The notes under the pieces were generated by a model. The model saw only the letters and a list, made by a program, of their open reading frames with translations, did not search any database and was not told where the DNA came from. A DNA stretch of 64,000 nucleotides, from contig JAHLTZ010000041.1 in the NCBI GenBank assembly GCA_025786725.1, positions 1 to 64,000 of the forward strand, in the 5' to 3' direction. This document shows, piece after piece, positions 1 to 39,901 of this stretch (position 1 is its first letter; every line of letters begins with the position of its first letter). The stretch is from Syncephalis fuscata S228 (taxonomy: Eukaryota; Fungi; Zoopagomycota). Both the position numbers and the translations under genes were made by a program.

Positions 1-3000
1 CAAGTTTCGGTAATACCAAAAGCTTAGGCCTAGCTTCATCTATAAATATACCAATTCATATTAACCTGTTTATTCCTGTATTTTTTAGAACATCACGTTT
101 TCACAACTACATTAATGATAAAAATTTTACTGTTGTATTTACAGCACTTCGCTTTGAATACTTACATTTGTTGGGTATTATTGAACGCTTTCAATAATAA
201 GATTAAGTCGGAATAAAATGTTGCAGGTTCTTCTATTTGCAACAATAAATATATTTTTAAATGTATAACAGATAATTAAAATGCTAAAAAGCCTAAGGAT
301 TGACTTGCTCGGTTAACAAAATGCCGGTGTGGCCTTACATAAATGAAAAGCACTAAACAGGCATGACAAGAATCAGTACCTTTTTAATCAGAGAATACTG
401 CACCAGAATTCTAATAATGTGGAAAATATCCTAATAAGGCAATAGGCATTACACCTTATTACATTGGTAAACGTGAATCTTTTTGTCTCAGCGTCCAAGG
501 CCATGATTGGAACGTTTATTCAAAGCAGTGATATTAAGCAAAAGAGCAGATACGACTAAAAAGTAAAACACTTATATACTAGGACAAATGTTGTGCATTT
601 TTGTCAAAAACATATCTTTACTGCTTAAGATAGCCATTGCTACTTTTTAACGACTCTATATCTTTTATGTTTTATGTTTTCTACTTTCTAATCTATTGGT
701 GAAAGAATAGCTACAATTTAATTACGCCAAAAATTGTTACCTGAATCTGACAATTTTTATACCACTTACCTTTTTATTCAATATGAAGAGCAGTTTTATT
801 TTGCTTGCAGCTATTGTTCTTGCTGCACAAAGCGTTGCTGCTCGCCCTAATGCTGCAAACGGCGACTGTGGATTTGCTACTTTGAACTGTGTCCGTAACA
901 CTAAAAATTGTGGTGTAACTGACCAATCTTTAAAAGTTAACGGCTCATGTGTTAATACTATCAAAATCTCTTTTATTCATAACTTTAAGTGCAATATTTT
1001 GCATCCTATTTGTTGTGGTATAAACAAATGTAAAGCAACAGAAACGGCTCAAATACCTCCACGTGTACCAACGCTACCTGTGCCAGCCCCATCAGCTCCA
1101 ACTGTTGGACCGGTAAAGCAGCCGACTCCAGTGACAACATCAACTCCAGTTCTACCTGTGCCGACCCCATCGACTCCAATTGTTACTCCTCCTGCAAATG
1201 AAAACTGTGGATCTGTTGTTTTGGGCTGTTTCCGTGACACTGTAAAATGTGGTACACTTGAACAGCCTTTAAAAGTTAACGGCGTATGCGTTGATACCAT
1301 CCAGGTTTCTGCCACTCATAAGCTTAAATGTGCTGCCTTGCATCCTATCTGTTGCGGTTTAAACAAATGTAAAGTAACAGAAATTTCTCGGACACCTCGA
1401 CGTGTGCCAACGCTACCTGTGCCAGCCCCATCAGTTCCAACTGTCGAACCAGTAAAGCAGCCGACTCCAGTAACAACAACAACTCCAGTTGTTACTTGTC
1501 CTTCTGCAAACGCAGACTGTGGATCTGTTGTTTTGGGCTGTTTCCGTGACACTGTAAAATGCGGTACACTTGAACAGCCTTTAAAAGTTAACGGCGTATG
1601 CGTTGATACCATCCAGGTTTCTGCCACTCATAAGCTTAAATGTGCTGCCTTGCATCCTATCTGTTGCGGTTTAAACAAATGTAAAGTAACAGAAATTTCT
1701 CGAACACCTCGACGTGTGCCAACGCTACCTGTGCCAGCCCCATCAGTTCCAACTGTCGAACCAGTAAAGCAGCCGACTCCAGTAACAACATCAACTCCAA
1801 TTGTTACTCCTCCTGCAAACGCAGACTGTGGATCTGTTGTTTTGGGCTGTTTCCGTGACACTGTAAAATGCGGTACACTTGAACAGCCTTTAAAAGTTAA
1901 CGGCGTATGCGTTGATACCATCCAGGTTTCTGCCACTCATAAGCTTAAATGTGCTGCCTTGCATCCTATCTGTTGCGGTTTAAACAAATGTAAAGTAACA
2001 GAAATTTCTCGAACACCTCGACGTGTGCCAACGCTACCTGTGCCAGCCCCATCAGTTCCAACTGTTGGACCGGTAAAGCAGCCGACTCCAGTGACAACAT
2101 CAACTCCAGTTCTACCTGTGCCGACCCCATCGACTCCAATTGTTACTCCTCCTGCAAATGAAAACTGTGGATCTGTTGTTTTGGGCTGTTTCCGTGACAC
2201 TGTAAAATGTGGTACACTTGAACAGCCTTTAAAAGTTAACGGCGTATGCGTTGATACCATCCAGGTCTCTGCCACTCATAAGCTTAAATGTGCTGCCTTG
2301 CATCCTATCTGTTGCGGTTTAAACAAATGTAAAGTAACAGAAATTTCTCGAACACCTCGACGTGTGCCAACGCTACCTGTGCCAGCCCCATCAGTTCCAA
2401 CTGTCGAACCAGTAAAGCAGCCGACTCCAGTAACAACATCAACTCCAATTGTTACTCCTCCTGCAAATGAAAACTGTGGATCTGTTGTTTTGGGCTGTTT
2501 CCGTGACACTGTAAAATGCGGTACACTTGAACAGCCTTTAAAAGTTAACGGCGTATGCGTTGATACCATCCAGGTTTCTGCCACTCATAAGCTTAAATGT
2601 GCTGCCTTGCATCCTATCTGTTGCGGTTTAAACAAATGTAAAGTAACAGAAATTTCTCGAACACCTCGACGTGTGCCAACGCTACCTGTGCCAGCCCCAT
2701 CAGTTCCAACTGTTGGACCGGTAAAGCAGCCGACTCCAGTGACAACATCAACTCCAGTTCTACCTGTGCCGACCCCATCGACTCCAATTGTTACTCCTCC
2801 TGCAAATGAAAACTGTGGATCTGTTGTTTTGGGCTGTTTCCGTGACACTGTAAAATGCGGTACACTTGAACAGCCTTTAAAAGTTAACGGCGTATGCGTT
2901 GATACCATCCAGGTCTCTGCCACTCATAAGCTTAAATGTGCTGCCTTGCATCCTATCTGTTGCGGTTTAAACAAATGTAAAGTAACAGAAATTTCTCGAA

Positions 3001-4280
3001 CACCTCGACGTGTGCCAACGCTACCTGTGCCAGCCCCATCAGCTCCAACTGTTGGACCGGTAAAGCAGCCGACTCCAGTGACAACATCAACTCCAGTTCT
3101 ACCTGTGCCGACCCCATCGACTCCAATTGTTACTCCTCCTGCAAATGAAAACTGTGGATCTGTTGTTTTGGGCTGTTTCCGTGACACTGTAAAATGCGGT
3201 ACACTTGAACAGCCTTTAAAAGTTAACGGCGTATGCGTTGATACCATCCAGGTCTCTGCCACTCATAAGCTTAAATGTGCTGCCTTGCATCCTATCTGTT
3301 GCGGTTTAAACAAATGTAAAGTAACAGAAATTTCTCGAACACCTCGACGTGTGCCAACGCTACCTGTGCCAGCCCCATCAGCTCCAACTGTCGAACCAGT
3401 AAAGCAGCCGACTCCAGTGACAACATCAACTCCAGTTTTACCTGTGCCAACTCCATCAACTCCAGTTGTTACTTGTCCTTCTGCAAACGCAGACTGTGGA
3501 TCTGTTGTTTTGGGCTGTTTCCGTAACACTGTAAAATGTGGTGTACTTGAGCAGCCTTTAAAAGTTAACGGCATATGCGTCGATGCTCTCCAGGTCAATG
3601 CCATCCATAATCTTGGATGTGCTGCCTTGCATCCTATCTGTTGCGGTTTAAACCGCTGTACAGCAACAGAAATTTCTCGAACACCCCCACGTGCATCAGT
3701 GTAAACATTGACCCCTGCTATTGCTACGCCGAAGCCATCAATCTAATGACTTCTAAACCATTATAAATGCCAAATTCAGTTATTTCTACATTTATAGCAT
3801 AATATTATATCACTCGTAGGCCGGTGATAATATGAATTTCAGTTATAATAAACTAATGTTATTATTAATTTGATCATTTCCAAGTCAATTCTAATTTTAT
3901 GTCAGTGATTTTATTTAGTTACATCAGCGTCAGCTTTTGTGTGCACGTTAGTACCGGTCCCTAAACTTGATGGCTATACTTACAATTCCTATTTGATAAA
4001 GCTCATACTTATAGTGTCGCTTATTAACTATACATGCAGTTTATATTATGCACTAAACCGTAATAAACATTTGTTTTATTGAACATGGGGATGGATGGTG
4101 AATGACATCAAGTTCAAAATACTCGTCATTATAGATTCATTATCTAGTATGCATATATTCATCATTTACCTATATAACCATTACAATATATAATTATTAT
4201 AAAGAAAATTGATACAATAAGTTATTTTTTATTAATTCAATAAAAAGCGACACTAGTTTACTGCATTCCCATATTTAGTA
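1..4280 (+). repeat. Segmental duplication unit, copy 1 (5' flank + Cys-rich gene + ~575 bp 3' flank); left end lies outside the window
   Basis: Flanks nearly identical to those in 31261-34946 and 36320-39901. Confidence 0.9.
783..3704 (+). CDS. Secreted Cys-rich repeat protein, paralog 1 (9 copies of an 8-Cys domain with Pro/Thr/Val linkers)
   Basis: Intronless 973-aa ORF; signal-peptide-like N-terminus MKSSFILLAAIVLAAQSVAA; repeated C-x6-C-x6-C-x12-C-x13-C-x6-CC-x4-C domain; DNA repeat units of 309-342 bp. Confidence 0.9.
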   Translation: MKSSFILLAAIVLAAQSVAARPNAANGDCGFATLNCVRNTKNCGVTDQSLKVNGSCVNTIKISFIHNFKCNILHPICCGINKCKATETAQIPPRVPTLPVPAPSAPTVGPVKQPTPVTTSTPVLPVPTPSTPIVTPPANENCGSVVLGCFRDTVKCGTLEQPLKVNGVCVDTIQVSATHKLKCAALHPICCGLNKCKVTEISRTPRRVPTLPVPAPSVPTVEPVKQPTPVTTTTPVVTCPSANADCGSVVLGCFRDTVKCGTLEQPLKVNGVCVDTIQVSATHKLKCAALHPICCGLNKCKVTEISRTPRRVPTLPVPAPSVPTVEPVKQPTPVTTSTPIVTPPANADCGSVVLGCFRDTVKCGTLEQPLKVNGVCVDTIQVSATHKLKCAALHPICCGLNKCKVTEISRTPRRVPTLPVPAPSVPTVGPVKQPTPVTTSTPVLPVPTPSTPIVTPPANENCGSVVLGCFRDTVKCGTLEQPLKVNGVCVDTIQVSATHKLKCAALHPICCGLNKCKVTEISRTPRRVPTLPVPAPSVPTVEPVKQPTPVTTSTPIVTPPANENCGSVVLGCFRDTVKCGTLEQPLKVNGVCVDTIQVSATHKLKCAALHPICCGLNKCKVTEISRTPRRVPTLPVPAPSVPTVGPVKQPTPVTTSTPVLPVPTPSTPIVTPPANENCGSVVLGCFRDTVKCGTLEQPLKVNGVCVDTIQVSATHKLKCAALHPICCGLNKCKVTEISRTPRRVPTLPVPAPSAPTVGPVKQPTPVTTSTPVLPVPTPSTPIVTPPANENCGSVVLGCFRDTVKCGTLEQPLKVNGVCVDTIQVSATHKLKCAALHPICCGLNKCKVTEISRTPRRVPTLPVPAPSAPTVEPVKQPTPVTTSTPVLPVPTPSTPVVTCPSANADCGSVVLGCFRNTVKCGVLEQPLKVNGICVDALQVNAIHNLGCAALHPICCGLNRCTATEISRTPPRASV

Positions 4281-5312
4281 GGGGAATTTAGGAAAATACA
4301 CCATTTTTAAATTTTATCATAATAAATTTCTTTTTTTAAATTTACTAAATTTATTTATTAATTAATCATTTTTTGTTTGCCCCACACTTCGTTTTTTGTA
4401 ATGAGGTTTATCACAGACTAAACATTGTTTAATGGAACGCTTTATTTTTTAATAGCTGTTTCATTACTAGTTTGTATTTGTTCAATAATAAACGTTTATT
4501 ACAACAGCAACTACTGTTTCAATACTATTAGTGCTATTTTACACAGCATATTTTTGTATTGTGTTTTTTAAATGTATTTACCACAGGTATATTGTGAAAG
4601 GCTTTTAACAAATAAATACGATTGGCATTGCTGATAATATTGCTACAATCAACTAAATTACATACATAAGCAAAGGTTTAAATTAAAATTGTTGCATTTA
4701 TTGTGATTAAACTTTTCCCATCAGGCAATTTTTAGCTTTGTAACATTTATTATTCAATAGTATTGTAAATACATAATACTGTTACTCAATAATAATAATA
4801 AAAATACCTTTTATAATTCAGTTCATTTTAATTTATTATCAAGGTTTATACAGTTACAACTTTTGTTATAAACATGCTAATTTGAGCTATTGTTATAAGT
4901 TAGTCATTCAATACTAATAATGGGTTTTATTAAATTGATATTAAACATCTGACTAAGCTACTATTTCTATTTATTTCAACTTTAGCTGTTTGTTCAAAGC
5001 TACATCGTTTATTACTAGTGTTGTAACAATGTCATTTTTATCGAATTAAAACAAATCAAGCTTTGTAATAAGAAATAATAGCATCTGTTAAGCTGTTACA
5101 ATTGCTAGTGTATATTGAATAATCAAATATGTACTTAATGCTTTAGTTGTACATTTTTTGGTTTTATATTTGAGAATGTAGCAACATTATATGTAATAGA
5201 TTTAGTAATAGAATTTTTAATAAAAGGATTTAATAATTTAATAAGAAGGGGAAAATTTAAAAAATTAAAAACAGTGCATTTTTCAAAAAATTTCAATTTA
5301 TTACCGCATTCC
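4281..5312 (-). mobile_element. Truncated copy of the degenerate Mutator-like element
   Basis: 4281-~5212 nearly identical to 34947-~35882; then diverges into a different TIR-like end (aaattaaaaacagtgcatttttc). Right boundary approximate. Confidence 0.6.
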
Positions 5313-5783
5313 TACTTGACTGTCTATATATAATTTCTGTAGCATGCCAAATAATAATCATTTCATAAGTACTTATCAAAGTGCTTATTGCTAGGTAACT
5401 GCTTGGGCCTTTAAGTCAAATATCATATGTTTATTCACTAATTTAAATCCATAGTATTCAATTAAAATGCTATACTCTTCAACAGTTTAATAATTCAATT
5501 CATTTAATACGCTATTTCAATTGAAGATTATAAAACATAAGCAATAATACTATCATTTTATTAGTTCGATAACTGATTATACTTGACAGTACTAAATATA
5601 AAGCAGAATGTTAAGGTTTTAAAAGGTAAAATATTTGCACTATTGTTGTGTTATTACTGAAAGTATTGTTATACAAAATAGATTGCAAATAATCTATAAT
5701 TCAATTTATTAATTAAATTAGCTAAAACATTACATTTGGTTTTTTTACTAATGGAGGCAGTCATATAATATCAACATAATTCT

Positions 5784-9550: not shown

Positions 9551-12500
9551 ATGAAAAGAACGCGTTCTACGCTTTCTAGGGACGTTGTATCCCAGCCGTT
9601 GGCGGACCTGAGAAAGAAGACGCGTAATATTCTCGGTTCTTCAGGTTCTGCCCACATCGACGCGGAAAATGTATCCGCTTATTGTTCTAGGCCTATTAGT
9701 AAGCCTATTCAACTATCTAGCGCTACGGATGCGCGTGTAAGTAATATATTCGCTATAAACAATGTAACAGTACTTGATGATTAACATGTATAAATATATA
9801 GCCTAAACTGAATCTACGTTCGATGAATCGATTAGCCGAAACAACCAATATACTTGGTTCTTCTGAAACGCCACGTACTAATCGTACAGAGAAGCGTAAA
9901 GCAACCGATCGACCAGGTCTATCACTTGCGTCAAAACGTGCCAAATCCACGCTTCCTCCAGGCCATGTAATGCCTCGTAAACCAGCTGATATTTACGGCG
10001 ATCAATGGATGGACAAGCAGGAACGGTCCTTTTTGAACTGGATTAATTACGAGTTTGAACAAGCATCGGTTACCAAGAACTTTATTGATAATGCATCTAG
10101 ACAAGGATCATTGCAACATTTTACAGTTTATATGGAATTCGAACGTATTTGTAATGTAGCCCGTGTATTCTTTAATAGCAAGCCATTACAAACAATTATT
10201 AATAAAGTAGATCAGGTAAGTAGTTTATTAATTAATATCAAGCTATATTTACATTTACATTACATTTATATTAGGCCATTGACAAAAAGAATCTAACAGT
10301 TCAAACCGATAGCGATCTATGCATGGATATTACTAAGCGTCAGCAATTAACAGCCACGCTCACTTCATTCGATGCACGTTGGCTTATACTGGCTTTAAGT
10401 GTATTGACACCGCCATCAACAATAACCAGTTCTACTATTCAAAAAAACAGTTTAGATTCGTTAATTGAAAAGGTAAAATAATAACATTAAATTACTATTA
10501 ACTGTACTAACGCTTACGTAGCATATAATGGGCCATTCACGACGTGGTAATACGTGGGATAGTAATTTACTATTTGAACGTAACAAGAATACAACTAAAC
10601 GTATTTTTGCCATGGTTCTTTTCCTTGATCATGCCAAAGCAGCCAATCTAGTACCGAATCAACCGTGTTTGTTTGCAAAGGTAAATATATACTATTCTAA
10701 TATATGATATTTGTTTATTTATGCAAGTTAACTATAATTGCTCTAGAATTCAGTATTTAAATCAAGTCAATCCATTCTACAAGAAATTGGACGCCAATGT
10801 TTAGTCGGTGAAGGCGATACCATTCGGCATCTTTCGTATATTGGTTACACGGTTAATTGTGCGCAATCCTCTATGGACGAGTACAACTATCGAGTAGATA
10901 ATCTTGCCGTTGATTTACGAGATGGTATTCGTATTGCGCGTTTAATTGAACTGCATTCACTTAATTCTTTTCGTTTTACTGTAAGTAACAATAATAACAT
11001 TACAAATAACAATATTTATATATTTATATATTGAATGAATATAGTCACTAAAGGTGCCAGCCAATGAACGAGCAGATAGAATACGTAATTTAGAGTTATG
11101 TTTCAAGCATCTATCTAAAGAAGGCCTAAAATTAACAAGTTTCCGTGATGGACGTATTAAACCAGAAGATGTTGTTGATGGACATCGTAAAAATACACTT
11201 GAAATGTTATGGCGTCTTATTCTCCACTGGAAAGTGGGTGGATTGGTAAATCAGGAAGAATTACGTACAGAGACTAGACAATTAGTTTGTGATTATGTTC
11301 GTCAATTCCGGGCCCGTCCAGCTTTTGACGCTGAGGTAATTAGTCTTCAATAGCTATTAGATTAACATTAATACTTGTAATTAGAATTGTGTTTATTTGT
11401 CCTCAAATACTTTATCACTACTACTAAAATGGTGTCAGGCTGTCGGTGCCTTTTACAACATTAGAGTATCAAACTTTACAACCAGCTTTGCTGATGGCAG
11501 TATGTTCTGTTATCTTATTGGTCATTATCATCCAACTCTACTTGGAAAGCGATCTATTCTATTTGCTGCAGATGAAAAGATTAAAGATGTAAGTAAATAT
11601 CCATACTATACTTGCAATTAGTATAATTAATACTGCTATATATTAGGACAAAGAGACATTTGCTCGATTGGACAGTATACCAAGTAATAGTAACAATTTT
11701 ACTATTTCATTCAGTCCATTGCGTTCAAATCGCCAATTAATGCCTCTTCAACGAGCGGGCATTCATAACTATCGACTATTAGAAGAAATGACCCGTCAAA
11801 TTGGTGGTATTCCATTGATGTGTAAGTATATTGATTATAGTAATTATCTATGGACTAATTTGCTATATAGTTAATGATCGGGATTTTACACAGACATCTA
11901 TTCCAGATGAGAAAGTAGTTATTACTTATGTATCCTATTTATGTTCTCGTTTACTTGTACTTAGTGCTGAACGTAGAGTAAGTAGTGTATTTACGATGGA
12001 GACTATAGTGTGTGTATTTACAACTATTGGCATATAGGCGGCCATAACAATCCAGCGATTCTGGCGACGATATGGTGGCGATCGTTACACGCCGGAACAT
12101 CATAAAGCGGCGATTGCTATACAGAAAGCTGTACGTCAATACTTGGAACGACGTCGTCAAGAACGGCATCGTATTGCTTGTATTACACGAGTTCAATCTA
12201 TCTGGCGTGGTCGGTGTGCTCGTCGGCGTGTACAGCTAATTCAAAATGCTATAACAACGCTACAGTTCTATGCGCGTAGCTATCTAGCGCGTCAAAATAT
12301 ACGTCAAGAACAAGCGGCTATTCTATTACAGAAATGTATGCGTGGCTATTTAGCACGACAAGCATACAAACAACAGAGTCAGCGTATAGTAAAATTGCAA
12401 ACAATGATACGTGGCTATTTAGCACGTCGAGCATGTCAACAAAAACGCAAACAAATACGTGCAGCCACTCGAATTCAAGCTGCCTATCGTCGTTATCGAT

Positions 12501-15444
12501 GTGTTAGCGATTATCAAAAGCTTTTACAAACTGTGTTATATTTACAACGTCGTCGACGTGCTTTGATTGCTATGCGCCGAACAAGATCTACCTATCAACA
12601 AACAATTGGTGGCATTTGTGCCATTCAAGCATTAATTCGTGGTCAACAAGCACGTGAACGTACAAAGACGATGCTTAAGGCTATTACTGGTATACAAGCA
12701 CATATCCGTCGATGGAATGTACAACAGTGCTATAGACAGCAATATGAAGCGGCCGTGCTTATTCAGAAAATATGGCGTGGATTCCATGAACGCAAACAGT
12801 ATCATAATGTGTTAGGAGCAGCTCGTACAATCCAATTACAATGGCGTGCCGTACAACAAGGACGTGCTTTAAGAAGTCAATTAGCTATGCAGCATAAAGC
12901 TGCAACTGCTATTCAAGCATGCTACCGTGGCTGGCGTACACGCTACCACGTATCTGTTTACCAACAAGCAGTACGTGTTATAGAACAGCGCCGATGGGAA
13001 ACACTACAGGCCCGACGACAACAACAAGCTTATATTAGCTTGAAGCACGCAACGCTAATTATACAACGTCGCTGGCGAGCAACGCTATATACAAGACAAG
13101 TACGCAGTATGTATTTATCTTGGCAACATGCCGCCATTACTGTGCAGCGATTTGTTCGGGGCTATCAAGTTCGTTCCCGACTTGCTTATCTTCGTAAAGC
13201 AGTGGCAGTGGTTGAACAGCGACGCTCACAACTATTACAGGCCAATCAAGAAAGACGTGCATTTGTACAATTGCGTTCTATTACTACTCGACTACAACAA
13301 CGCTGGCGTGCTATTTTATTAGGAAGACAAGAACGAGTACAATACTTGCGTTACAATGGGCCAGTATTAAAATACAATCCGTATTTAAAGGCTACCGTGT
13401 ACGACAAGCCATCAATAGTTTAAGAGTAAGCGTACGCACGGTTGAAATGTATAGAAGTGCACAGTTACAAGGTCGTGAACAACGACACGATTATCTTGCC
13501 CTTCGATCGGCCACCATTTATGTACAACGACGTTGGCGAGCCATATTAGCAGGTCGGGAAACTCGACAACAATGGCAACTATATCAATGGGCCAGCCAAA
13601 CTATCCAGCGCCATTACCGTGGCTATCGTGTACGATATCAACTGGCTGCACTACGCTCAAGCGTTGCCATTATTGAAGCACGCCGATCTGCTTTACTAAT
13701 GACTCGACAATGTGAAGCACAGTATCAAACATTGCGTCGAGTGGTTATTAATATGCAACGACGTCGTCGGGCAACAGCTGTTGCTTGTCAGGTACAGGCG
13801 GAATATCAAGTAGTAAGATGTAGTATTATTGGTATTCAATCATTTATTCGTGGTCAATTGGCACGAGAAATGACTCAGCAACAAAGGGCGGCCACTTGTA
13901 TTCAAGCAGCCTATCGAGGCCATCGTCAATTTATGGCATACCAACGTTTGTACGAAGCAACACTACAAGTGCAACGACGCCGACGTGCTCTATTGGCTGG
14001 CAGATGTGCACGCGCTGAGCTAGAGCAATTGAAATGGGCCACACAAGTATTACAATCACAATGGAGAGCACGTCAAGTAGGACATGCTGTTAGACAAGAA
14101 TATATCGTGGCAAAACAGGCTATTAACGGAGTCCAGGCTTTAATACGTGGCTATAATGCACGCCAATGTATTGAACAAGAACGGGAAAAACTAGCGTTTA
14201 TTGTTCAATTACAAGCCATTAGTCGAGGCTATTTAGTACGACTGGCTGGCCAGCAACAACAACAAGCAGCAACTTGTATTGCAGCCGCTTATCGTGGCCA
14301 TGTTCAACGGCAAGCTTATCTAGATTTACAACAATCAGTCATTGGTCTACAAACGTATTACCGTGCTCAATGTGCCCGCCAATTGCATCAACAATTGGTG
14401 CAGGAACGAGAAGAACGATGCGAGGCCATTTGTGTCTATATTCAAGTTCAAAATGCTGCTCGAACTATTCAACGGGTCTATCGTCGCCGTTTACATGCAG
14501 CACAGCTAGAACGTATTGAATCAGCACGACAATTAGCCGCTGTACAAGTACTACAATTCCACGCTCGTGGCTGGCTAGAGCGTATACGTTATCTACGTTT
14601 AATACGGGCTATTCGGTCCTTCCAATCGGTATGGCGTGGCTATAGAGTTCGTAAAAAACATCACGCCAAGTACGTATTGCACGTGCCCGTATCGAAAAGG
14701 CCAATGCCAATGTTCAAGAGGATATGCGTTTGATCAATCGTACCACGGTGGCTATTGAAACTATTCTAGGCAGTCGTCGACTTACCGATGTAATTCATGC
14801 GTGTATTCATTTAGGTAAGCCATACTATTTTATTATAAAATTAAACTAATCAATAGCAATACATTATAATAGAGGTTGCAACACGTTGGTCGCGCGAGTG
14901 TCGACGCCGTTTACTTGATCACAATGTAGTCGGTGTTATGCTGTCGACTATGAGTTCATGTAATCAGAGTGCACCGCACAAAAGACTATTAATGCATGCT
15001 TGTCGCACATTACAACACTTGGCGACTGATCCACAGTGTATGGAAGCAGTACTTCCCAATCCAGCTGCCGTTGATGTAATGATTGATTTACTAAAAGTAT
15101 ATCAGCGAAAATACGAAGATGCCGAGCTATTTAAATCTATCGCCCAAATTTTCTTGCTTATTACCTGTGAGCCTCAGTGTTGTAGGGTAGGTTAAAATCA
15201 TGTAATATTTGCCATGACACAACTAACGCTATTTAATTTATTCTAGCCTATACTGCGTACGGTGAACGCAGTTAGACGAATGCACGAGATTCACGTACTT
15301 GCAAAAAAACGACACGAAAGAGAAGTGGCCACTAGCACGGCTGCATCGACCGATAAGCAAGCACAATTAAAGAAACAAGCAAAAGCGCTTGATATGCTTG
15401 GTACAGCCATTGGTACATTAAAGGATTTAATGGCTAATCGTTAA
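9551..15444 (+). CDS. ASPM: Abnormal spindle / ASPM-like protein (CH domains, long IQ array, C-terminal helical region); multi-exon with two apparent 1-nt frameshifts
   Basis: [80 protein letters not shown], then dozens of IQxxxRGxxxR motifs. Confidence 0.85.
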
Positions 15445-30476: not shown

Positions 30477-31260
30477 TGGTTATAACTAGTAACAATAAAA
30501 ATGTCAAATCTTCATTATAGTCTTGGTTATTAGAAATAATGATATTACGTTTTATAATAACCATATGTAATAAAATAACAAATAATCCAATCTTATAATG
30601 CGCATAACTATTATGTATTGATGATAAATTATTTATACAATAATTCTGACTATAAAAACGAACATTTGCACGATGGTCATAGTTAATGGCAAGTGAGATA
30701 TGTGTGTAATCAAATGGCTATAGTTGATAATATTTGTTATAAATAATTGATTATGTTATTTTGGATAATAAAATAATCGCATACTTATACTAAACACTAC
30801 ATAGATTGTTAATGCTATTAAAAAAGAGCTCGAATGTCTTCATGTGATAATTATCAATTCATATGACTAACCATAGAGGCTGAATAGCAAATTAATTCAA
30901 AAATCATTTGTAATATTAATGATATGTAATATAATTAAAAATGATTTAATGCCACTATATATTTGCTACTATTCACATGTATACTGGTAACACCATTAGA
31001 CCATATGTATCCATATGTCATACAATCGATAATTTGTTAAATATTCAAGCACGTGACTTATCAGTAGTATTTATAATTATATTTGATTACGTGACATAGT
31101 TGATATAATTAGTGTATCTGTAATACTGGGCACTGCTTTTAGTATATGAAAGCTAAGGCTGATCGTAAACACGTTTTATAAAAATTATATGAGCCATGAA
31201 AGCTATCGCTAGTTATTAAAACAAAATTTTAAATGATAAAAATAAAAAATTGCACGTTGG

Positions 31261-34200
31261 TATTAAAATACTGTGCAATTACTCAAGTTTCGGTAATACC
31301 AAAAGCTTAGGCCTAGCTTCATCTATAAATATACCAATTCATATTAACCTGTTTATTCCTGTATTTTTTAGAACATCGCGTTTTCACAACTACATTAATG
31401 ATAAAAATTTTACTGTTGTATTTACAGCACTTCGCTTTGAATACTTACATTTGTTGGGTATTATTGAACGCTTTCAATAATAAGATTAAGTCGGAATAAA
31501 ATGTTGCAGGTTCTTCTATTTACAACAATAAATATATTTTTAAATGTATAACAGATAATTAAAATGATAAAAAGCCTAAGGATTGACTTGCTCGGTTAAC
31601 AAAATGCCGGTGTGGCCTTACATAAATGAAAAGCACTAAACAGGCATGACAAGAATCAGTACCTTTTTAATCAGAGAATACTGCACCAGAATTCTAATAA
31701 TGTGGAAAATATCCTAATAAGGCAATAGGCATTACACCTTATTACATTGGTAAACGTGAATCTTTTTGTCTCAGCGTCCAAGGCCATGATTGGAACGTTT
31801 ATTCAAAGCAGTGATATAAGCAAAAGGGCAGATACGACTAAAAAGTAAAACCTTATATACTAGGACAAATGTTGTGCATTTTTGTCAAAAACATATCTTT
31901 ACTGCTTAAGATAGCCATTGCTACTTTTTAACGACTCTATATCTTTTATGTTTTATGTTTTCTGCTTTCTAATCTATTGATGAAAGAATAGCTACAATTT
32001 AATTACGCCAAAAATTGTTACCTGAATCTGACAATTTTTATACCACTTACCTTTTTATTCAATATGAAGAGCAGTTTTATTTTGCTTGCAGCTATTGTTC
32101 TTGCTGCACAAAGCGTTGCTGCTCGTCCTAATACTGCAAACGGCGACTGCGGATTTGCTACTTTGAACTGTGTCCGTAACACTAAAAATTGTGGTGTAAC
32201 TGACCAATCTTTAAAAGTTAACGGCTCATGTGTTAATACTATCAAAATCTCTTTTATTCATAACTTTAAGTGCAATATTTTGCATCCTATTTGTTGTGGT
32301 ATAAACAAATGTAAAGCAACAGAAACGGCTCAAATACCTCCACGTGTACCAACGCTACCTGTGCCAGCCCCATCAGCTCCAACTGTCGAACCAGTAAAGC
32401 AGCCGACTCCAGTGACAACATCAACTCCAGTTCTACCTGTGCCAACTCCATCAGTTCCAATTGTTACTCCTCCTGCAAATGAAAGCTGTGGATCTGTTGT
32501 TTTGGGCTGTTTCCGTGACACTGTAAAATGCGGTACACTTGAAGAGCCTTTAAAAGTTAACGGCGTATGCGTTGATACCATCCAGGTTTCTGCCACTCAT
32601 AAGCTTAAATGTGCTGCCTTGCATCCTATCTGTTGCGGTTTAAACAAATGTAAAGTAACAGAAATTTCTCGAACACCTCGACGTGTGCCAACGCTACCTG
32701 TGCCAGCCCCATCAGCTCCAACTGTCGAACCAGTAAAGCTACCTGTGCCAGTAACAACAACAACTCCAGTTCTACCTGTGCCAGCCCCATCAGTTCCAAC
32801 TGTCGAACCAGTAAAGCAACCGACTCCAGTGACAACAACAACAACTCCAGTTCTACCTGTACCGACCCCATCGACTCCAATTGTTACCCCTCCTGCAAAT
32901 GAAAACTGTGGATCTGTTGTTTTGGGCTGTTTCCATAGCACTATAAAATGTGGTACACTTGAAGAGCCTTTAAAAGTTAACGGCGTATGCGTTGATACCA
33001 TCCAGGTCTCTGCCACTCATAATCTTAAATGTGCTGCCTTGCATCCTATCTGTTGCGGTTTAAACAAATGTAAAGTAACAGAAATTTCTCGAACACCTCG
33101 ACGTGTGCCAACGCTACCTGTGCCAGCCCCATCAGCTCCAACTGTCGAACCAGTAAAGCAACCCGTGCCAGTAACAACAACAACTCCAGTTCTACCTGTG
33201 CCAGCCCCATCAGTTCCAACTGTCGAACCAGTAAAGCAACCGACTCCAGTGACAACAACAACAACTCCAGTTCTACCTGTGCCGACCCCATCAACTCCAA
33301 TTGTTACTCCTCCTGCAAATGAAAGCTGTGGATCTGTTGTTTTGGGCTGTTTCCGTGACACTGTAAAATGCGGTACACTTGAAGAGCCTTTAAAAGTTAA
33401 CGGCGTATGCGTTGATACCATCCAGGTTTCTGCCACTCATAAGCTTAAATGTGCTGCCTTGCATCCTATCTGTTGCGGTTTAAACAAATGTAAAGTAACA
33501 GAAATTTCTCGAACACCTCGACGTGTGCCAACGCTACCTGTGCCAGCCCCATCAGCTCCAACTGTCGAACCAGTAAAGCTACCTGTGCCAGTAACAACAA
33601 CAACTCCAGTTCTACCTGTGCCAGCCCCATCAGTTCCAACTGTCGAACCAGTAAAGCAACCGACTCCAGTGACAACAACAACAACTCCAGTTCTACCTGT
33701 ACCGACCCCATCGACTCCAATTGTTACCCCTCCTGCAAATGAAAACTGTGGATCTGTTGTTTTGGGCTGTTTCCATAGCACTATAAAATGTGGTACACTT
33801 GAAGAGCCTTTAAAAGTTAACGGCGTATGCGTTGATACCATCCAGGTCTCTGCCACTCATAATCTTAAATGTGCTGCCTTGCATCCTATCTGTTGCGGTT
33901 TAAACAAATGTAAAGTAACAGAAATTTCTCGAACACCTCGACGTGTGCCAACGCTACCTGTGCCAGCCCCATCAGCTCCAACTGTCGAACCAGTAAAGCA
34001 ACCCGTGCCAGTAACAACAACAACTCCAGTTCTACCTGTGCCAGCCCCATCAGTTCCAACTGTCGAACCAGTAAAGCAACCCGTGCCAGTAACAACAACA
34101 ACTCCAGTTCTACCTGTGCCAACTCCATCGACTCCAATTGTTACTCCTCCTGCAAATGAAAACTGTGGATCTGTTGTTTTGGGCTGTTTCCATAGCACTA

Positions 34201-34946
34201 TAAAATGTGGTACACTTGAAGAGCCTTTAAAAGTTAACGGCGTATGCGTTGATACCATCCAGGTCTCTGCCACTCATAATCTTAAATGTGCTGCCTTGCA
34301 TCCCATCTGTTGCGGTTTAAACAAATGTAAAGTAACAGAAATTTCTCGAACACCCCCACGCGCATCAGTGTAAACATTGACCCCTGCTATCGCTACGCCG
34401 AAGCCATCAATCTAATGACTTAACCATTATAAATGCCAAATTCAGTTATTTCTACATTTATAGCATAATATTATATCACTCGTAGGCCGGTGATAATATG
34501 AATTTCAGTTATAATAAACTAATGTTATTATTAATTTGATCATTTTCAAGTCAATTCTAATTTTATGTCAGTGATTTTATTTAGTTACATCAGCGGCAGC
34601 TTTTGTGTGCACGTTAGTACCGGTCCCTAAACTTGATGGCTATACTTACGATTCCTATTTGATAAAGCTCATACTTATAGTGTCGCTTATTAACTATACA
34701 TGCAGTTTATATTCTGCACTAAACCATAATAAACATTTGTTTTATTGAACATGGGGATGGATGGTGAATGACATCAAGTTCAAAATACTCGTCATCATAG
34801 ATTCATTATCTAGTATGCATATATTCATCATTTACCTATATAACCATTACAATATATAATTATTATAAAGAAAATTGATACAATAAGTTATTTTTTATTA
34901 ATTCAATAAAAAGCGACACTAGTTTACTGCATTCCCATATTTAGTA
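31261..34946 (+). repeat. Segmental duplication unit, copy 2
   Basis: About 800 bp upstream and 575 bp downstream flanks shared with copies 1 and 3. Confidence 0.9.
32064..34373 (+). CDS. Secreted Cys-rich repeat protein, paralog 2 (6 domains)
   Basis: Same signal peptide and domain; 420-bp units arranged in an 840-bp higher-order repeat. Confidence 0.9.
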   Translation: MKSSFILLAAIVLAAQSVAARPNTANGDCGFATLNCVRNTKNCGVTDQSLKVNGSCVNTIKISFIHNFKCNILHPICCGINKCKATETAQIPPRVPTLPVPAPSAPTVEPVKQPTPVTTSTPVLPVPTPSVPIVTPPANESCGSVVLGCFRDTVKCGTLEEPLKVNGVCVDTIQVSATHKLKCAALHPICCGLNKCKVTEISRTPRRVPTLPVPAPSAPTVEPVKLPVPVTTTTPVLPVPAPSVPTVEPVKQPTPVTTTTTPVLPVPTPSTPIVTPPANENCGSVVLGCFHSTIKCGTLEEPLKVNGVCVDTIQVSATHNLKCAALHPICCGLNKCKVTEISRTPRRVPTLPVPAPSAPTVEPVKQPVPVTTTTPVLPVPAPSVPTVEPVKQPTPVTTTTTPVLPVPTPSTPIVTPPANESCGSVVLGCFRDTVKCGTLEEPLKVNGVCVDTIQVSATHKLKCAALHPICCGLNKCKVTEISRTPRRVPTLPVPAPSAPTVEPVKLPVPVTTTTPVLPVPAPSVPTVEPVKQPTPVTTTTTPVLPVPTPSTPIVTPPANENCGSVVLGCFHSTIKCGTLEEPLKVNGVCVDTIQVSATHNLKCAALHPICCGLNKCKVTEISRTPRRVPTLPVPAPSAPTVEPVKQPVPVTTTTPVLPVPAPSVPTVEPVKQPVPVTTTTPVLPVPTPSTPIVTPPANENCGSVVLGCFHSTIKCGTLEEPLKVNGVCVDTIQVSATHNLKCAALHPICCGLNKCKVTEISRTPPRASV

Positions 34947-36319
34947 GGGGAATTTAGGAAAATACACCATTTTTAAATTTTATCATAATAAATTTCTTTT
35001 TTTAAATTTACTAAATTTATTTATTAATTAATCATTTTTTTGTTTGCCCCACACTTCGTTTTTTGTAATGAGGTTTATCACAGACTAAACATTCTTTAAT
35101 GGAACGCTTTATTTTTTAATAGCTGTTTCATTACTAGTTTGTATTTGTTCAATAATAAACGTTTATTACAACAGCAACTACTGTTTCAATACTATTAGTG
35201 CTATTTTACACAGCATATTTTTGTATTGTGTTTTTTAAATGTATTTACCACAGGTATATTGTTGAAAGGCTTTTAACAAATAAATACAATTGACATTGCT
35301 GATAATATTGCTACAATCAACTAAATTACATACATAAGCAAAGGTTTAAATTAAAATTATTGCATTTATTGTGATTAAACTTTTTCCATCAGGCAATTTT
35401 TAGCTTTGTAACATTTATTATTCAATAGTATTGTAAATACATAGTACTGTTACTCAATAATAATAATAAAAATGCCTTTTATAATTCAGTTCATTTTAAT
35501 TTATTATCAGGGTTTATACAGTTACAACTTTTGTTATAAACATGCTAATTTGAGCTACTGTTATAAGTTAGTCATTCAATACTAATAATGGGTTTTATTA
35601 AATTGATATTAAACATCTGACTAAGCTACTATTTCTATTTATTTCAACTTTAGCTGTTTGTTCGAAGCTACATCATTTATTACTAATGTTGTAACAATGT
35701 CATTTTTATCGAATTAAAAGCAAATCAAGCTTTGTAATAAGAAATAATAGCATCTGTTAAGCTGTTACAATTGCTAGTGTATATTGAACAATTAAATATG
35801 TGCTTAATGCTTTTAGTTGTACATTTTTTGGTTTTATATTTGAGAATGTAGCAACATTATATGTAATAGATTTAGTAACAGATTTAATAGTATTATTACC
35901 AGAATTATATGGACAGTCATCAAAATGCTCAAGATTGTATTGAACAATCTTTACCAAGCCAGTTTTCTGCTTTCTGGCAGTCAAGACAAACTGACACTTG
36001 CTGTAATTGTCTTTATGAAAACAAATAAGCTGTAATATTTTTAAATCGATATTTTCTCTTAAAATTGCAATTGCTGGCAAGCTTAAACTCGTCAACGGCA
36101 ATTCTCAGTTTTTTGATACTGGTAAACATAGCTTTTTAAATAGTTTGGTAGACATTGTGGAAAATTTTCAAATAATTTATTTCAATAAATAAAATTTAAA
36201 AATAATGCATTTTACTAATAAATAAATTTAAAAAATTTAAAAAGTGAATTCATTATGATGAAATTAAAAAACGGTATATATTTTTAAATAAAAAACCTGT
36301 GTATTTTTCCAATTTCCTC
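34947..36319 (-). mobile_element. Degenerate, internally deleted Mutator-like (MULE) DNA transposon
   Basis: Imperfect ~90-bp TIRs (ggggaatttaggaaaatacac ... gtgtatttttccaatttcctc, plus matching subterminal AT tract). Minus-strand remnant LICFHKDNYSKCQFVLTARK..VKIVQYNLEHFDDC resembles the MuDR DNA-binding domain; stop-riddled SWIM-like TCGK..LCKIAL further on. Confidence 0.6.
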
Positions 36320-39300
36320 ATTAAAATACTGTGCAATTACTCAAGTTTCGGTAATACCAAAAGCTTAGGCCTAGCTTCATCTATAAATATACCAATTCAT
36401 ATTAACCTGTTTATTCCTGTATTTTTTAGAACATCGCGTTTTCACAACTACATTAATGATAAAAATTTTACTGTTGTATTTACAGCACTTCGCTTTGAAT
36501 ACTTACATTTGTTGGGTATTATTGAACGCTTTCAATAATAAGATTAAGTCGGAATAAAATGTTGCAGGTTCTTCTATTTACAACAATAAATATATTTTTA
36601 AATGTATAACAGATAATTAAAATGATAAAAAGCCTAAGGATTGACTTGCTCGGTTAACAAAATGCCGGTGTGGCCTTACATAAATGAAAAGCACTAAACA
36701 GGCATGACAAGAATCAGTACCTTTTTAATCAGAGAATACTGCACCAGAATTCTAATAATGTGGAAAATATCCTAATAAGGCAATAGGCATTACACCTTAT
36801 TACATTGGTAAACGTGAATCTTTTTGTCTCAGCGTCCAAGGCCATGATTGGAACGTTTATTCAAAGCAGTGATATTAAGCAAAAGGGCAGATACGACTAA
36901 AAAGTAAAACGCTTATATACTAGGACAAATGTTGTGCATTTTTGTCAAAAACATATCTTTACTGCTTAAGATAGCCATTGCTACTTTTTAACGACTCTAT
37001 ATCTTTTATGTTTTATGTTTTCTGCTTTCTAATCTATTGATGAAAGAATAGCTACAATTTAATTACGCCAAAAATTGTTACCTGAATCTGACAATTTTTA
37101 TACCACTTACCTTTTTATTCAATATGAAGAGCAGTTTTATTTTGCTTGCAGCTATTGTTCTTGCTGCACAAAGCGTTGCTGCTCGTCCTAATACTGCAAA
37201 CGGCGACTGCGGATTTGCTACTTTGAACTGTGTCCGTAACACTAAAAATTGTGGTGTAACTGACCAATCTTTAAAAGTTAACGGCTCATGTGTTAATACT
37301 ATCAAAATCTCTTTTATTCATAACTTTAAGTGCAATATTTTGTACCCTATTTGTTGTGGTATAAACCAATGTAAAGCAACAGAAATAACTCAAATACCTC
37401 CACGTGTACCAACGCTACCTGTGCCAGCCCCATCAGTTCCAACTGTTGGACCGGTAAAGCAGCCGACTCCAGTGACAACAACATCAACTCCAGTTCTACC
37501 TGTGCCGACCCCATCAACTCCGATTGTTACTCCTCCTGCAAATGAAAACTGTGGATCTGTTGTTTTGGGCTGTTTCCGTGACACTGTAAAATGCGGTACA
37601 CTTGAACAGCCTTTAAAAGTTAACGGCGTATGCGTTGATACCATCCAGGTTTCTGCCACTCATAAGCTTAAATGTGCTGCCTTGCATCCTATCTGTTGTA
37701 GATTAAACCGCTGTATAGTGAGAGAAATTACTCAAACACCTCCAAGTGTACCAGCGCAACCATCAACTCCAGTTCTACCTGTGCCAACTCCATCAGTTCC
37801 AACTGTCGAACCAGTAAAGCTACCCGTGCCAGTAACAACAACAACCCCAGTTCTACCTGTACCAACTCCATCAGTTCCAACTGTCGAACCAGTAAAGCTA
37901 CCTGTGCCAGTAACAACAACAACCCCAGTTCTACCTGTACCAACTCCATCAGTTCCAACTGTCGAACCAGTAAAGCAACCCGTGCCAGTAACAACAACAA
38001 CTCCAGCTCTACCTGTACCAACTCCATCAGTTCCAACTGTCGAACCAGTAAAGCTACCTGTGCCAGTAACAACAACAACTCCAGCTCTACCTGTACCAAC
38101 TCCATCAGTTCCAACTGTCGAACCAGTAAAGCAACCCGTGCCAGTAACAACAACAACTCCAGCTCTACCTGTACCAAGTCCATCAGTTCCAACTGTCGAA
38201 CCAGTAAAGCAGCCGACTCCAGTAACAACATCAACTCCAGTTCTACCTGTGCCGACCCCATCAACTCCAATTGTTACTCCTCCTGCAAATGAAAACTGTG
38301 GATCTGTTGTTTTGGGCTGTTTCCGTAACACTGTAAAATGTGGTACACTTGAACAGCCTTTAAAAGTTAACGGCGTATGCGTTGATACCATCCAGGTTTC
38401 TGTCACTCATAATCTTAAATGTGCTGCCTTGCATCCTATCTGTTGCGGTATAAACCGCTGTACAACAACAGAAATTTCTCGAACACCTCAACGTGTGCCA
38501 GCGCTACCTGTGCCAACTCCATCAGTTCCAACTGTCGGACCAGTAAAGCAGCCAACTCCAGTGACAACAACAACAACTCCAGTTCTATCTGTGCCAACTC
38601 CATCAGTTCCAACTGTCGAACCAGTAAAGCTACCTGTGCCAGTAACAACAACAACTCCAGCTCTACCTGTGCCAACTCCATCAGTTCCAACTGTCGAACC
38701 AGTAAAGCAGCCGACTCCAGTGACAACAACAACAACTCCAGTTCTACCTGTGCCAACTCCATCAGTTCCAACTGTCGAACCAGTAAAGCAACCCGTGCCA
38801 GTAACAACAACAACTCCAGCTCTACCTGTGCCAACTCCATCAGTTTCAACTGTCGAACCAGTAAAGCAACCCGTGCCAGTAACAACAACAACAACTCCAG
38901 TTCTATCTGTGCCAACTTCATCAGTTCCAACTGTCGAACCAGTAAAGCTACCTGTGCCAGTAACAACAACAACTCCAGCTCTACCTGTGCCAACTCCATC
39001 AGTTCCAACTGTCGAACCAGTAAAGCAGCCGACTCCAGTGACAACATCAACTCCAGTTTTACCTGTGCCAACTCCATCAACTCCAGTTGTTACTCGTCCT
39101 CCTCCTGCAAATGCAGACTGTGGATCTGTTGTTTTGGGCTGTTTCCGTAACACTGTAAAATGTGGTGTACTTGAGCAGCCTTTAAAAGTTAACGGCATAT
39201 GCGTCGATGCTCTCCAGGTCAATGCCATCCATAATCTTGGATGTGCCGCCTTGCATCCCATCTGTTGCGGTTTAAACCGCTGTACAGCAACAGAAATTTC

Positions 39301-39901
39301 TCGAACACCCCCACGCGCATCAGTGTAAACATTGACCCCTGCTATCGCTACGCCGAAGCCATCAATCTAATGACTTAACCATTATAAATGCCAAATTCAG
39401 TTATTTCTACATTTATAGCATAATATTATATCACTCGTAGGCCGGTGATAATATGAATTTCAGTTATAATAAACTAATGTTATTATTAATTTGATCATTT
39501 TCAAGTCAATTCTAATTTTATGTCAGTGATTTTATTTAGTTACATCAGCGGCAGCTTTTGTGTGCACGTTAGTACCGGTCCCTAAACTTGATGGCTATAC
39601 TTACGATTCCTATTTGATAAAGCTCATACTTATAGTGTCGCTTATTAACTATACATGCAGTTTATATTCTGCACTAAACCATAATAAACATTTGTTTTAT
39701 TGAACATGGGGATGGATGGTGAATGACATCAAGTTCAAAATACTCGTCATCATAGATTCATTATCTAGTATGCATATATTCATCATTTACCTATATAACC
39801 ATTACAATATATAATTATTATAAAGAAAATTGATACAATAAGTTATTTTTTATTAATTCAATAAAAAGCGACACTAGTTTACTGCATTCCCATATTTAGT
39901 A
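36320..39901 (+). repeat. Segmental duplication unit, copy 3
   Basis: Flanks near-identical to copy 2; ends at catatttagta with no transposon following. Confidence 0.9.
37124..39328 (+). CDS. Secreted Cys-rich repeat protein, paralog 3 (4 domains, expanded mucin-like linkers)
   Basis: Same signal peptide and domain; linkers of tandem ~27-aa (81-84 bp) PVLPVPTPSVPTVEPVKxPVPVTTTT units. Confidence 0.9.
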   Translation: MKSSFILLAAIVLAAQSVAARPNTANGDCGFATLNCVRNTKNCGVTDQSLKVNGSCVNTIKISFIHNFKCNILYPICCGINQCKATEITQIPPRVPTLPVPAPSVPTVGPVKQPTPVTTTSTPVLPVPTPSTPIVTPPANENCGSVVLGCFRDTVKCGTLEQPLKVNGVCVDTIQVSATHKLKCAALHPICCRLNRCIVREITQTPPSVPAQPSTPVLPVPTPSVPTVEPVKLPVPVTTTTPVLPVPTPSVPTVEPVKLPVPVTTTTPVLPVPTPSVPTVEPVKQPVPVTTTTPALPVPTPSVPTVEPVKLPVPVTTTTPALPVPTPSVPTVEPVKQPVPVTTTTPALPVPSPSVPTVEPVKQPTPVTTSTPVLPVPTPSTPIVTPPANENCGSVVLGCFRNTVKCGTLEQPLKVNGVCVDTIQVSVTHNLKCAALHPICCGINRCTTTEISRTPQRVPALPVPTPSVPTVGPVKQPTPVTTTTTPVLSVPTPSVPTVEPVKLPVPVTTTTPALPVPTPSVPTVEPVKQPTPVTTTTTPVLPVPTPSVPTVEPVKQPVPVTTTTPALPVPTPSVSTVEPVKQPVPVTTTTTPVLSVPTSSVPTVEPVKLPVPVTTTTPALPVPTPSVPTVEPVKQPTPVTTSTPVLPVPTPSTPVVTRPPPANADCGSVVLGCFRNTVKCGVLEQPLKVNGICVDALQVNAIHNLGCAALHPICCGLNRCTATEISRTPPRASV

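What the first reader, a model, noticed from the sequence alone, without database searches (positions are those of the whole stretch)
783..39328. Three-gene family of secreted 'beads-on-a-string' proteins built from an unrecognised 8-Cys domain
Seen: three intronless paralogs (783, 32064, 37124) share a signal peptide and a distinct N-terminal domain variant, and carry 9, 6 and 4 copies of a ~55-aa domain with spacing C-x6-C-x6-C-x12-C-x13-C-x6-CC-x4-C. Domains are joined by Pro/Thr-rich linkers; there is no TM helix or GPI signal (all end PPRASV). Knowledge: the spacing does not fit hydrophobins (two CC pairs), CFEM (CxC) or hevein/CBM18. Inference: a multivalent secreted adhesin, lectin or effector system whose valency and spacing are tuned by repeat recombination.
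Basis: partly seen in the sequence, partly recalled or inferred. Interest (0 to 1): 0.8.

Follow-up and report, generated by a model that had tools for sequence, protein, structure and literature searches.

The report
Syncephalis secreted eight-cysteine repeat proteins

Summary
Three uninterrupted + strand ORFs (783-3704, 32064-34373, 37124-39328) encode 973, 769 and 734 aa proteins. Each has a signal peptide, no membrane or GPI segment, and 9, 6 and 4 exact copies of C-x6-C-x6-C-x12-C-x13-C-x6-CC-x4-C, joined by Pro/Thr/Val-rich linkers.

The genome is Syncephalis fuscata, an obligate mycoparasite (Zoopagales). No Pfam family, solved-structure sequence or known fold matches one domain. A profile search of 1.84 billion proteins found only:
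- this genome's own genes;
- one Syncephalis plumigaleata protein;
- one 104-aa metagenome protein.

The family is wider than reported. A 15.9-kb haplotig carries two more versions with different domain numbers and linker lengths. A distant paralog (contig C2) has one domain on an 888-aa glycoprotein-like tail and is syntenic with the S. plumigaleata gene.

Between domain variants dN/dS is about 0.7-0.95, while every cysteine is kept.

Function is inferred only:
- multivalent surface or adhesion protein, about 0.4;
- hydrophobin analogue, about 0.17;
- Kex2-cleaved polyprotein, about 0.17 (an RR site follows internal domains in A and B, never in C).

The domain is new, but the kind of protein is familiar.

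The parts
783..3704 (+). Gene A: 973 aa. Signal peptide, N-terminal variant 8-Cys domain (867-1031), seven near-identical internal domains (1206-1370, 1518-1682, 1827-1991, 2166-2330, 2475-2639, 2814-2978, 3153-3317), C-terminal variant domain (3495-3659). Linkers are 48-59 aa. RR follows 7 of the 8 non-terminal domains.
   Evidence: tandem period 309/339 bp
32064..34373 (+). Gene B: 769 aa, 6 domains (32148-32312, 32487-32651, 32907-33071, 33327-33491, 33747-33911, 34164-34328). Linkers are 58-85 aa. Two domain types (RDTV and HSTI) follow one another in the order RDTV, HSTI, RDTV, HSTI, HSTI. RR follows 4 of the 5 non-terminal domains.
   Evidence: tandem period 420 bp
37124..39328 (+). Gene C: 734 aa, 4 domains (37208-37372, 37550-37714, 38297-38461, 39119-39283). 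Linkers are very long (194 and 219 aa) and built from a 78-bp (26-aa) Pro/Thr/Val sub-repeat. There are no dibasic sites.
783..845 (+). Signal peptide of A (residues 1-21, MKSSFILLAAIVLAAQSVAAR). The same sequence starts B (32064-32126) and C (37124-37186), and a related one starts the distant paralog and the S. plumigaleata and metagenome homologues.
31844..48514 (.). Stretch that is collinear with the 15.9-kb contig C121 at 97-99 % identity outside the repeats. C121 is probably the other haplotype. It carries gene D (656 aa, 5 domains, in B's place) and gene E (602 aa, 4 domains, in C's place).

Best explanation
These genes form a family restricted to the genus Syncephalis. They encode secreted, non-anchored and probably O-glycosylated proteins.

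The functional unit is a compact 55-residue module locked by up to four disulfides. It is presented 4-9 times on extended Pro/Thr/Val spacers. I read the proteins as multivalent surface or contact proteins of the mycoparasite: many weak, identical binding modules would give avidity for a repetitive target such as a host or own cell-wall surface, and the spacers would set reach and spacing.

The ancestral form is signal peptide + one module + a long low-complexity glycoprotein tail. That form is the distant paralog F, which has a syntenic orthologue in S. plumigaleata. The multi-domain genes arose in the S. fuscata lineage by tandem amplification of a module-plus-linker unit. They keep changing by unequal recombination and by conversion between paralogs.

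Shown here: the architecture, the secretion signals, the conservation of the cysteine scaffold, the restriction to the genus, the repeat polymorphism and the fast evolution of non-cysteine positions.

Inferred only: glycosylation, disulfide pairing, binding, target, and any role in parasitism.
For: - Architecture and secretion features.
- The signal peptide and N-terminal module are homologous across gene A, gene C, paralog F, the S. plumigaleata protein P0004 and the metagenome protein P0003, with 26 invariant columns including all 8 Cys.
- In the F type, a single module sits at the tip of an 888-aa P/T/S/G/Y-rich tail with 19 N-x-S/T sequons. This is the layout of a displayed binding head, not of a cleavable precursor.
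- F and the S. plumigaleata gene lie in the same actin-flanked neighbourhood.
- Internal units in A are nearly identical in DNA: 7 internal domains give only 4 distinct sequences. The haplotig versions are mosaics of A-, B- and C-type domains.
- dN/dS is 0.72-0.95 between domain variants with all Cys kept, against 0.22-0.35 between species for the F type. This fits a stable scaffold with fast-changing surfaces.
- The organism is an obligate mycoparasite (for identity; PMC13188720 for lifestyle).
- Contigs of a run guessed to be RNA cover the gene from position 700 onward (ATG at 783) and none of 1-699.
Against: - No binding has been shown and no ligand-type signature is present. The internal domains have a single aromatic residue and are hydrophobic (GRAVY +0.45 to +0.69) and basic. 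That is unlike chitin-binding modules and also fits self-assembly or membrane activity.
- There is no GPI signal or other recognisable wall anchor, so retention at the surface is unexplained.
- The RR sites in A and B could mean the string is cut up.
- The structure model is only moderately confident (pLDDT 72.7, from 10 sequences).
- The dN/dS values rest on 7-48 differences per pair.
- Repeat numbers come from one assembly and could be partly mis-assembled.
Confidence: 0.4

Rival explanations
1. Functional analogue of (poly)hydrophobins. Each hydrophobic, disulfide-locked module would be an amphipathic unit that self-assembles at hydrophobic-hydrophilic interfaces. It would coat aerial sporangiophores or spores, or mediate attachment to hydrophobic host surfaces, in a fungus that lacks canonical hydrophobins. 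The multi-domain layout would parallel the tri- and pentahydrophobins of Claviceps.
For: - Eight cysteines in about 55 aa. The C-terminal half of the pattern (C-x13-C-x6-CC-x4-C) has the same order of cysteines as the second half of the hydrophobin pattern (from my knowledge of that pattern).
- Internal domains have GRAVY +0.45 to +0.69.
- Six-frame searches of the whole genome with PF01185 and PF06766 find nothing above cut-off.
- Multi-domain hydrophobins exist (PMC12375992).
Against: - The first CC pair is missing.
- No hit to either hydrophobin HMM, even at E up to 10.
- The predicted secondary structure is a hairpin plus two helices, not a beta-barrel, and no hydrophobin structure appears among matches at Z of 2 or more.
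- The domains are basic, with 4-6 Lys/Arg.
- The F-type module is hydrophilic (GRAVY -0.45).
- The hydrophobin genome searches had no positive control.
Confidence: 0.17
2. Kex2-processed repeat protein (KEP). In the Golgi a kexin would cut after the RR that follows each internal domain. This would release about 103-140-aa units, each a Pro/Thr tail plus one 8-Cys module, as many copies of a small basic cysteine-rich peptide. Such peptides could act as a toxin, effector or signal towards the host fungus.
For: - A and B meet the operational KEP definition: signal peptide, at least 3 repeats, and KR/RR/KK between repeats (PMC6339444).
- RR follows 7 of 8 non-terminal domains in A and 4 of 5 in B, always as EISRTPRR|VPTLP. 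The following VP is an X-P dipeptide, the type described as a STE13 signature in that paper.
- A stand-alone 104-aa homologue exists (P0003), so a single module can be a complete secreted product.
Against: - RR is absent from every linker of C and E, from the linker after the N-terminal domain in all genes, and from 2 of 4 linkers in D. Those linkers read PPR, PPS, PQR or PTS instead. Cleavage therefore cannot be a property of the family.
- The long Pro/Thr/Val spacers look like linkers rather than propeptides.
- The F type has a single module on a huge tail and no such site after the domain.
Confidence: 0.17
3. Tandem protease-inhibitor domains that act on or regulate subtilases. The idea comes from an S8 subtilase gene lying next to both the B/C cluster and the F locus.
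For: - S8 + Fn3_5 (+PA) subtilase genes lie about 1 kb from C (40367-42991, minus strand) and about 2 kb from F.
- Multi-domain disulfide-rich inhibitors strung on one chain are a known layout (general knowledge).
Against: - The genome has about 115 six-frame S8 matches, so neighbours are not rare.
- The syntenic S. plumigaleata interval has the F orthologue but no subtilase.
- Orientation differs between the two loci.
- There is no similarity to any known inhibitor family.
Confidence: 0.05

Closest known systems
Multi-domain (tri-/penta-) hydrophobins of Claviceps, Fusarium and Trichoderma (PMC12375992)
   Same: Secreted fungal proteins with several small eight-cysteine modules on one chain, joined by low-complexity linkers. 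The modules are hydrophobic, and repeat number differs between genes.
   Different: The cysteine pattern has one CC pair instead of two, with different spacing. There is no match to PF01185 or PF06766. The predicted secondary structure is not a beta-barrel. The linkers are Pro/Thr/Val-rich rather than Gly/Asn-rich. The family occurs in Zoopagomycota, outside the taxa where hydrophobins are known.
KEX2-processed repeat proteins, KEPs (PMC6339444)
   Same: Signal peptide, tandem repeats and an RR site between repeats in genes A and B. Copy number varies between relatives.
   Different: The repeat unit is a folded four-disulfide domain plus a long linker. The dibasic site is absent in paralogs C and E and in the F type. 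Processing is untested.
Fungal mucin-like adhesins and wall glycoproteins (Als, Flo and Epa type: binding head plus Ser/Thr-rich stalk)
   Same: Secreted proteins with a cysteine-stabilised module displayed on Pro/Thr-rich spacers that are probably O-glycosylated. Repeat number is recombination-prone and differs between alleles.
   Different: There is no GPI signal and no sequence similarity. The binding module itself is repeated along the chain rather than sitting only at the tip, except in the F type.
Tandem chitin-binding proteins (peritrophins with CBM14, multi-CBM18 lectins, LysM effectors)
   Same: The beads-on-a-string layout: small disulfide-rich modules separated by mucin-like linkers.
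   Different: No HMM match. The internal modules lack the conserved aromatic residues typical of carbohydrate-binding sites (one Phe, no Trp or Tyr).

Membership tests
Hydrophobin (PF01185 class I, PF06766 class II) | Eight cysteines in the order C-CC-C-C-CC-C (two adjacent pairs) | tested here: not met
   All 28 close copies and the 3 distant ones have C-C-C-C-C-CC-C, with one adjacent pair
Hydrophobin (PF01185 class I, PF06766 class II) | Match to the family HMM | tested here: not met
   Neither model is listed at E up to 10 for whole proteins or single domains
Hydrophobin (PF01185 class I, PF06766 class II) | Small beta-barrel core fold | tested here: inconclusive
   The AF2 model (pLDDT 72.7) has a hairpin plus two helices. 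Foldseek against PDB found nothing and the best VIA-align Z was 2.8, with no hydrophobin listed. The model is only moderately confident.
Hydrophobin (PF01185 class I, PF06766 class II) | Self-assembly into amphipathic films at interfaces | not testable with these tools
   Needs purified protein
KEX2-processed repeat proteins (KEPs) | Signal peptide and at least three internal repeats | tested here: met
KEX2-processed repeat proteins (KEPs) | KR, RR or KK site between the repeats | tested here: inconclusive
   Present in A (7 of 8 linkers), B (4 of 5) and D (2 of 4). Absent in C (0 of 3) and E (0 of 3).
KEX2-processed repeat proteins (KEPs) | Actual cleavage into released peptides | not testable with these tools
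   Needs proteomics or N-terminal sequencing
CFEM (PF05730), CBM18/hevein (PF00187), CBM14 (PF01607), Opy2 (PF09463) and other 6- to 8-Cys Pfam domains | Match to the family HMM | tested here: not met
   No cysteine-rich family is listed for single domains at E up to 10. The only rows are chance hits well below cut-off (RraA-like 14.1 bits, Xpo1 12.7 bits). P0003 and the F head give no family.
GPI-anchored fungal adhesins | C-terminal hydrophobic GPI signal | tested here: not met
   All close genes end ...TEISRTPPRASV and F ends ...YGYTGAY. The maximum 19-aa hydropathy after the signal peptide is 1.23.

The most novel reading that the evidence does not exclude
The 8-Cys module is an independently evolved, hydrophobin-like self-assembling unit of Zoopagomycota. 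This lineage has no canonical hydrophobins here. The module would be deployed as a poly-domain protein whose valency is reset by recombination. It would be a convergent solution for coating aerial structures or gluing the parasite to host hyphae.
Probability: 0.15. Interest if true: 0.7.

Novelty: new variant of a known kind. Interest (0 to 1): 0.42.

Why it matters
Syncephalis species are obligate parasites of other moulds, and almost nothing is known about the molecules they use at the host interface. These genes are lineage-specific, secreted, fast-evolving and variable in repeat number. They are therefore concrete candidates for attachment or effector functions. The domain is small enough to express, solve and test for binding or self-assembly.

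If the module proved to be surface-active, it would extend hydrophobin-like biology beyond the Dikarya.

[quoted passage not shown] The existence of one more such family is therefore not surprising in itself.

Tried and rejected
- **Pfam 'RraA-like' hit on protein A** (E 4e-18). Rejected: it sums seven weak 35-residue matches. One domain alone scores 14.1 bits against a cut-off of 24.5. DUF3281, DUF1833 and Ephrin_CRD arise the same way.
- **Word-index protein searches.** The single domain, whole protein B and an N-terminal profile returned only own-genome proteins and P0003.
- **Metagenome contig scan** with the domain profile: 33 pattern hits, none confirmed.
- **ESM Atlas search by features**: no usable hit.
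- **First AF2 run** on 7 sequences including flanks: pLDDT 48, unusable.
- **Fold searches** with the second model. PDB Foldseek gave nothing below E 9. VIA-align wide gave a best Z of 2.8, to unrelated viral glycoprotein pieces. The Atlas gave TM of 0.54 or less, to bacterial hypotheticals. None is meaningful.
- **Subtilase link.** Weakened because the neighbouring gene is missing at the syntenic S. plumigaleata locus and S8 genes are very numerous.
- **DNA of the P0003 metagenome contig** does not align to this genome, so it comes from another species.
- **Antisense ORFs** of 102-257 aa inside the repeats are by-products of the repeat and were not pursued.
- **Literature searches** found no earlier description of this domain or of Syncephalis secreted repeat proteins.
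Full report
**Observation**

The three ORFs are real and as described.
- A (783-3704, 973 aa), B (32064-34373, 769 aa) and C (37124-39328, 734 aa) are uninterrupted, on the + strand.
- They share the first 22 residues (MKSSFILLAAIVLAAQSVAARP) and the last eight (RTPPRASV).
- The pattern C-x6-C-x6-C-x12-C-x13-C-x6-CC-x4-C matches 9, 6 and 4 times, with no deviation in spacing in any of the 19 copies.
- The first copy in each gene is a distinct variant, 57 % identical to the internal type. The last copy of A and C is a third variant.
- Only two cysteines lie outside domains, both in A's linkers (residues 239 and 898).
- Tandem Repeats Finder gives periods of 309/339 bp (A), 420 bp (B) and a 78-bp linker sub-repeat (B, C).
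- Linkers are 48-219 aa with P 26-29 %, T 19-23 % and V 16-21 %.
- The N-terminal hydrophobic core averages 2.42 on the Kyte-Doolittle scale. No later 19-residue window exceeds 1.23, so there is no membrane helix or GPI-type tail.

**Organism and family size**

A fragment of a distant paralog is NCBI KAI9596527.1 of Syncephalis fuscata. It sits on a contig of 763,998 bp, the length of contig C2 of this assembly. The window therefore belongs to S. fuscata (Zoopagales), and notes of other agents on this genome name the same species. The genus is described as an obligate mycoparasite (reference cited in PMC13188720).

A six-frame search of the 29.4-Mb assembly found 30 domain copies:
- the 19 in the window;
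- 9 on contig C121: gene D (656 aa, 5 domains) and gene E (602 aa, 4 domains);
- one each on C2 and C58: gene F, 972 and 910 aa.

C121 is 15,948 bp and is collinear with window 31,844-48,514 at 97-99 % identity outside the repeats, including the downstream subtilase gene. I read it as the second haplotype, or else a very recent segmental duplicate. C58 stands in the same relation to C2.

D lies in B's place and E in C's place, yet they differ:
- D has 5 domains where B has 6.
- D is a mosaic: a C-type second domain, a unique third, a B-type fourth and an A/C-type last domain.
- E has linkers of 169 and 112 aa where C has 194 and 219.
- A's seven internal domains comprise only four distinct DNA sequences.

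The caveat is that repeat counts rest on one assembly.

**Ancestral form**

F has the homologous signal peptide, one 8-Cys module (one extra residue in the third gap) and an 888-aa tail rich in P, T, S, A, G and Y, with 19 N-x-S/T sequons. Its S. plumigaleata counterpart is P0004 (KAI8051539.1). It lies in the same actin-flanked neighbourhood, with F inverted, so the two are orthologous. An alignment of the first 100 residues of A, C, F, P0004 and the metagenome protein P0003 has 26 invariant columns, including all eight cysteines. The multi-domain genes thus look like a derived amplification of a module-plus-linker unit.

**Is the domain known?**
- Pfam gives nothing real. The RraA-like hit on A (E 4e-18) sums seven 35-residue matches, and one domain scores 14.1 bits against a cut-off of 24.5. 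P0003 and the F head have no family.
- No sequence of a solved structure matches at E up to 10.
- A profile of seven domain variants, searched by HMMER against 1.84 billion representative proteins, returned four real hits: B itself, the F fragment, P0004 and P0003. The other four hits are repetitive, unrelated proteins.
- Word-index searches with whole B and with an N-terminal profile added only A.
- A metagenome scan added nothing.
- AlphaFold2 on ten sequences gave a moderately confident model (pLDDT 72.7) with a hairpin (residues 4-9 and 14-20) and two helices (37-46 and 48-55).
- Foldseek against the PDB found nothing. VIA-align against 48,161 chains peaked at Z 2.8. The ESM Atlas gave TM 0.54 or less.

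At the protein level the family is confined to Syncephalis.

**Clues to function**
- The internal modules are hydrophobic (GRAVY +0.45 to +0.69), basic (pI 7.7-8.9) and aromatic-poor. The F-type module is hydrophilic (GRAVY -0.45).
- Nei-Gojobori dN/dS between domain variants within the multi-domain genes is 0.72-0.95, with every cysteine kept. Between species for the F type it is 0.22-0.35. Counts are small, but the pattern is that of a fixed scaffold with rapidly changing surfaces.
- RR follows internal domains in A (7 of 8 linkers), B (4 of 5) and D (2 of 4), always as RTPRR|VP. It never does so in C or E, nor after the N-terminal domain.
- A and B therefore meet the operational KEP definition of PMC6339444, but cleavage cannot be a family-wide property.
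- The genome has no match above cut-off to either hydrophobin HMM (no positive control).
- S8 + Fn3_5 subtilase genes neighbour both C and F. However, the genome has about 115 S8 matches, and the S. plumigaleata locus lacks the neighbour, so I give this little weight.

**Expression**

Logan contigs of run X1 are from the same organism, and the run is only guessed to be RNA. They cover 700-1500 at depth 20 or more and none of 1-699, while the ATG is at 783. This fits a transcript starting about 80 nt upstream, but it is weak evidence. I had only one reads call.

**Verdict**

My readings of its function are:
- a multivalent surface or contact protein of the parasite (0.4);
- a hydrophobin-like coat (0.17);
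- a Kex2-cleaved polyprotein (0.17);
- a protease inhibitor (0.05).

The rest is open. The domain is new but the kind of protein is familiar, so I score interest as moderate.

Noticed in passing
L022:1269-4187 (-) = G000 C2:251268-254186; second version L023:1334-4066 (-): Distant paralog F: signal peptide, one 8-Cys module, then an 826-888-aa tail. The tail has GGEYHDTPSAPAP repeats, recurring STCTGTSCGKTT mini-motifs, Tyr-rich GGYVPTTPSTP units and 19 N-glycosylation sequons. The two versions differ by 62 aa. NCBI holds only a 240-aa partial model.
   Followed up: partly
L031:10001-12900 (S. plumigaleata JAIXMF010000011.1): The F orthologue is annotated as a 201-aa protein (KAI8051539.1), and its last roughly 70 residues look out of frame. 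A 642-aa ORF in another frame (10972-12900) continues the F-like tail and ends ...YAGAY. The public model is therefore probably broken by a frameshift or a missed intron.
   Followed up: partly
window 40367-42991 (-); L022:6337-7782 (+); whole genome: S8 subtilases are strongly expanded, with about 115 six-frame matches to PF00082 in 29 Mb. An S8+PA+Fn3_5 gene lies beside C and an S8+Fn3_5 gene beside F (29 % identical to each other). The neighbour is absent at the syntenic S. plumigaleata locus.
   Followed up: partly
window 1-782 and 3705-5216 versus 31262-32063 and 34374-36000: The flanks of gene A are 96-98 % identical to the flanks of the B/C and D/E genes (blastn through C121). The duplicated unit therefore includes about 0.8 kb upstream and about 1.5 kb downstream, although A lies 28 kb from B with housekeeping genes in between.
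   Followed up: partly
window 783-3704 (protein P0009 in the public protein collection): The precomputed Pfam labels for protein A (PF03737 RraA-like, PF08875, PF11685) are artefacts of summing weak hits over repeats. They could mislead automatic annotation.
   Followed up: yes
window 1497-1499 and 3474-3476 (A residues 239 and 898): Two linkers of A read VVTCPSANADC and so carry an extra, unpaired cysteine just before a domain. The pair could form an extra intra- or inter-chain disulfide.
   Followed up: no
window 1071-1181: A 2024 soil-metagenome run (X4) has a contig that is identical over these 111 bases of linker and then diverges. This suggests close relatives of the gene in soil.
   Followed up: no
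window 1316-3604 (-), 32597-34273 (-), 37728-39261 (both strands): Long antisense and off-frame ORFs (102-257 aa) recur once per repeat unit. They are by-products of the repeat, not separate genes.
   Followed up: no
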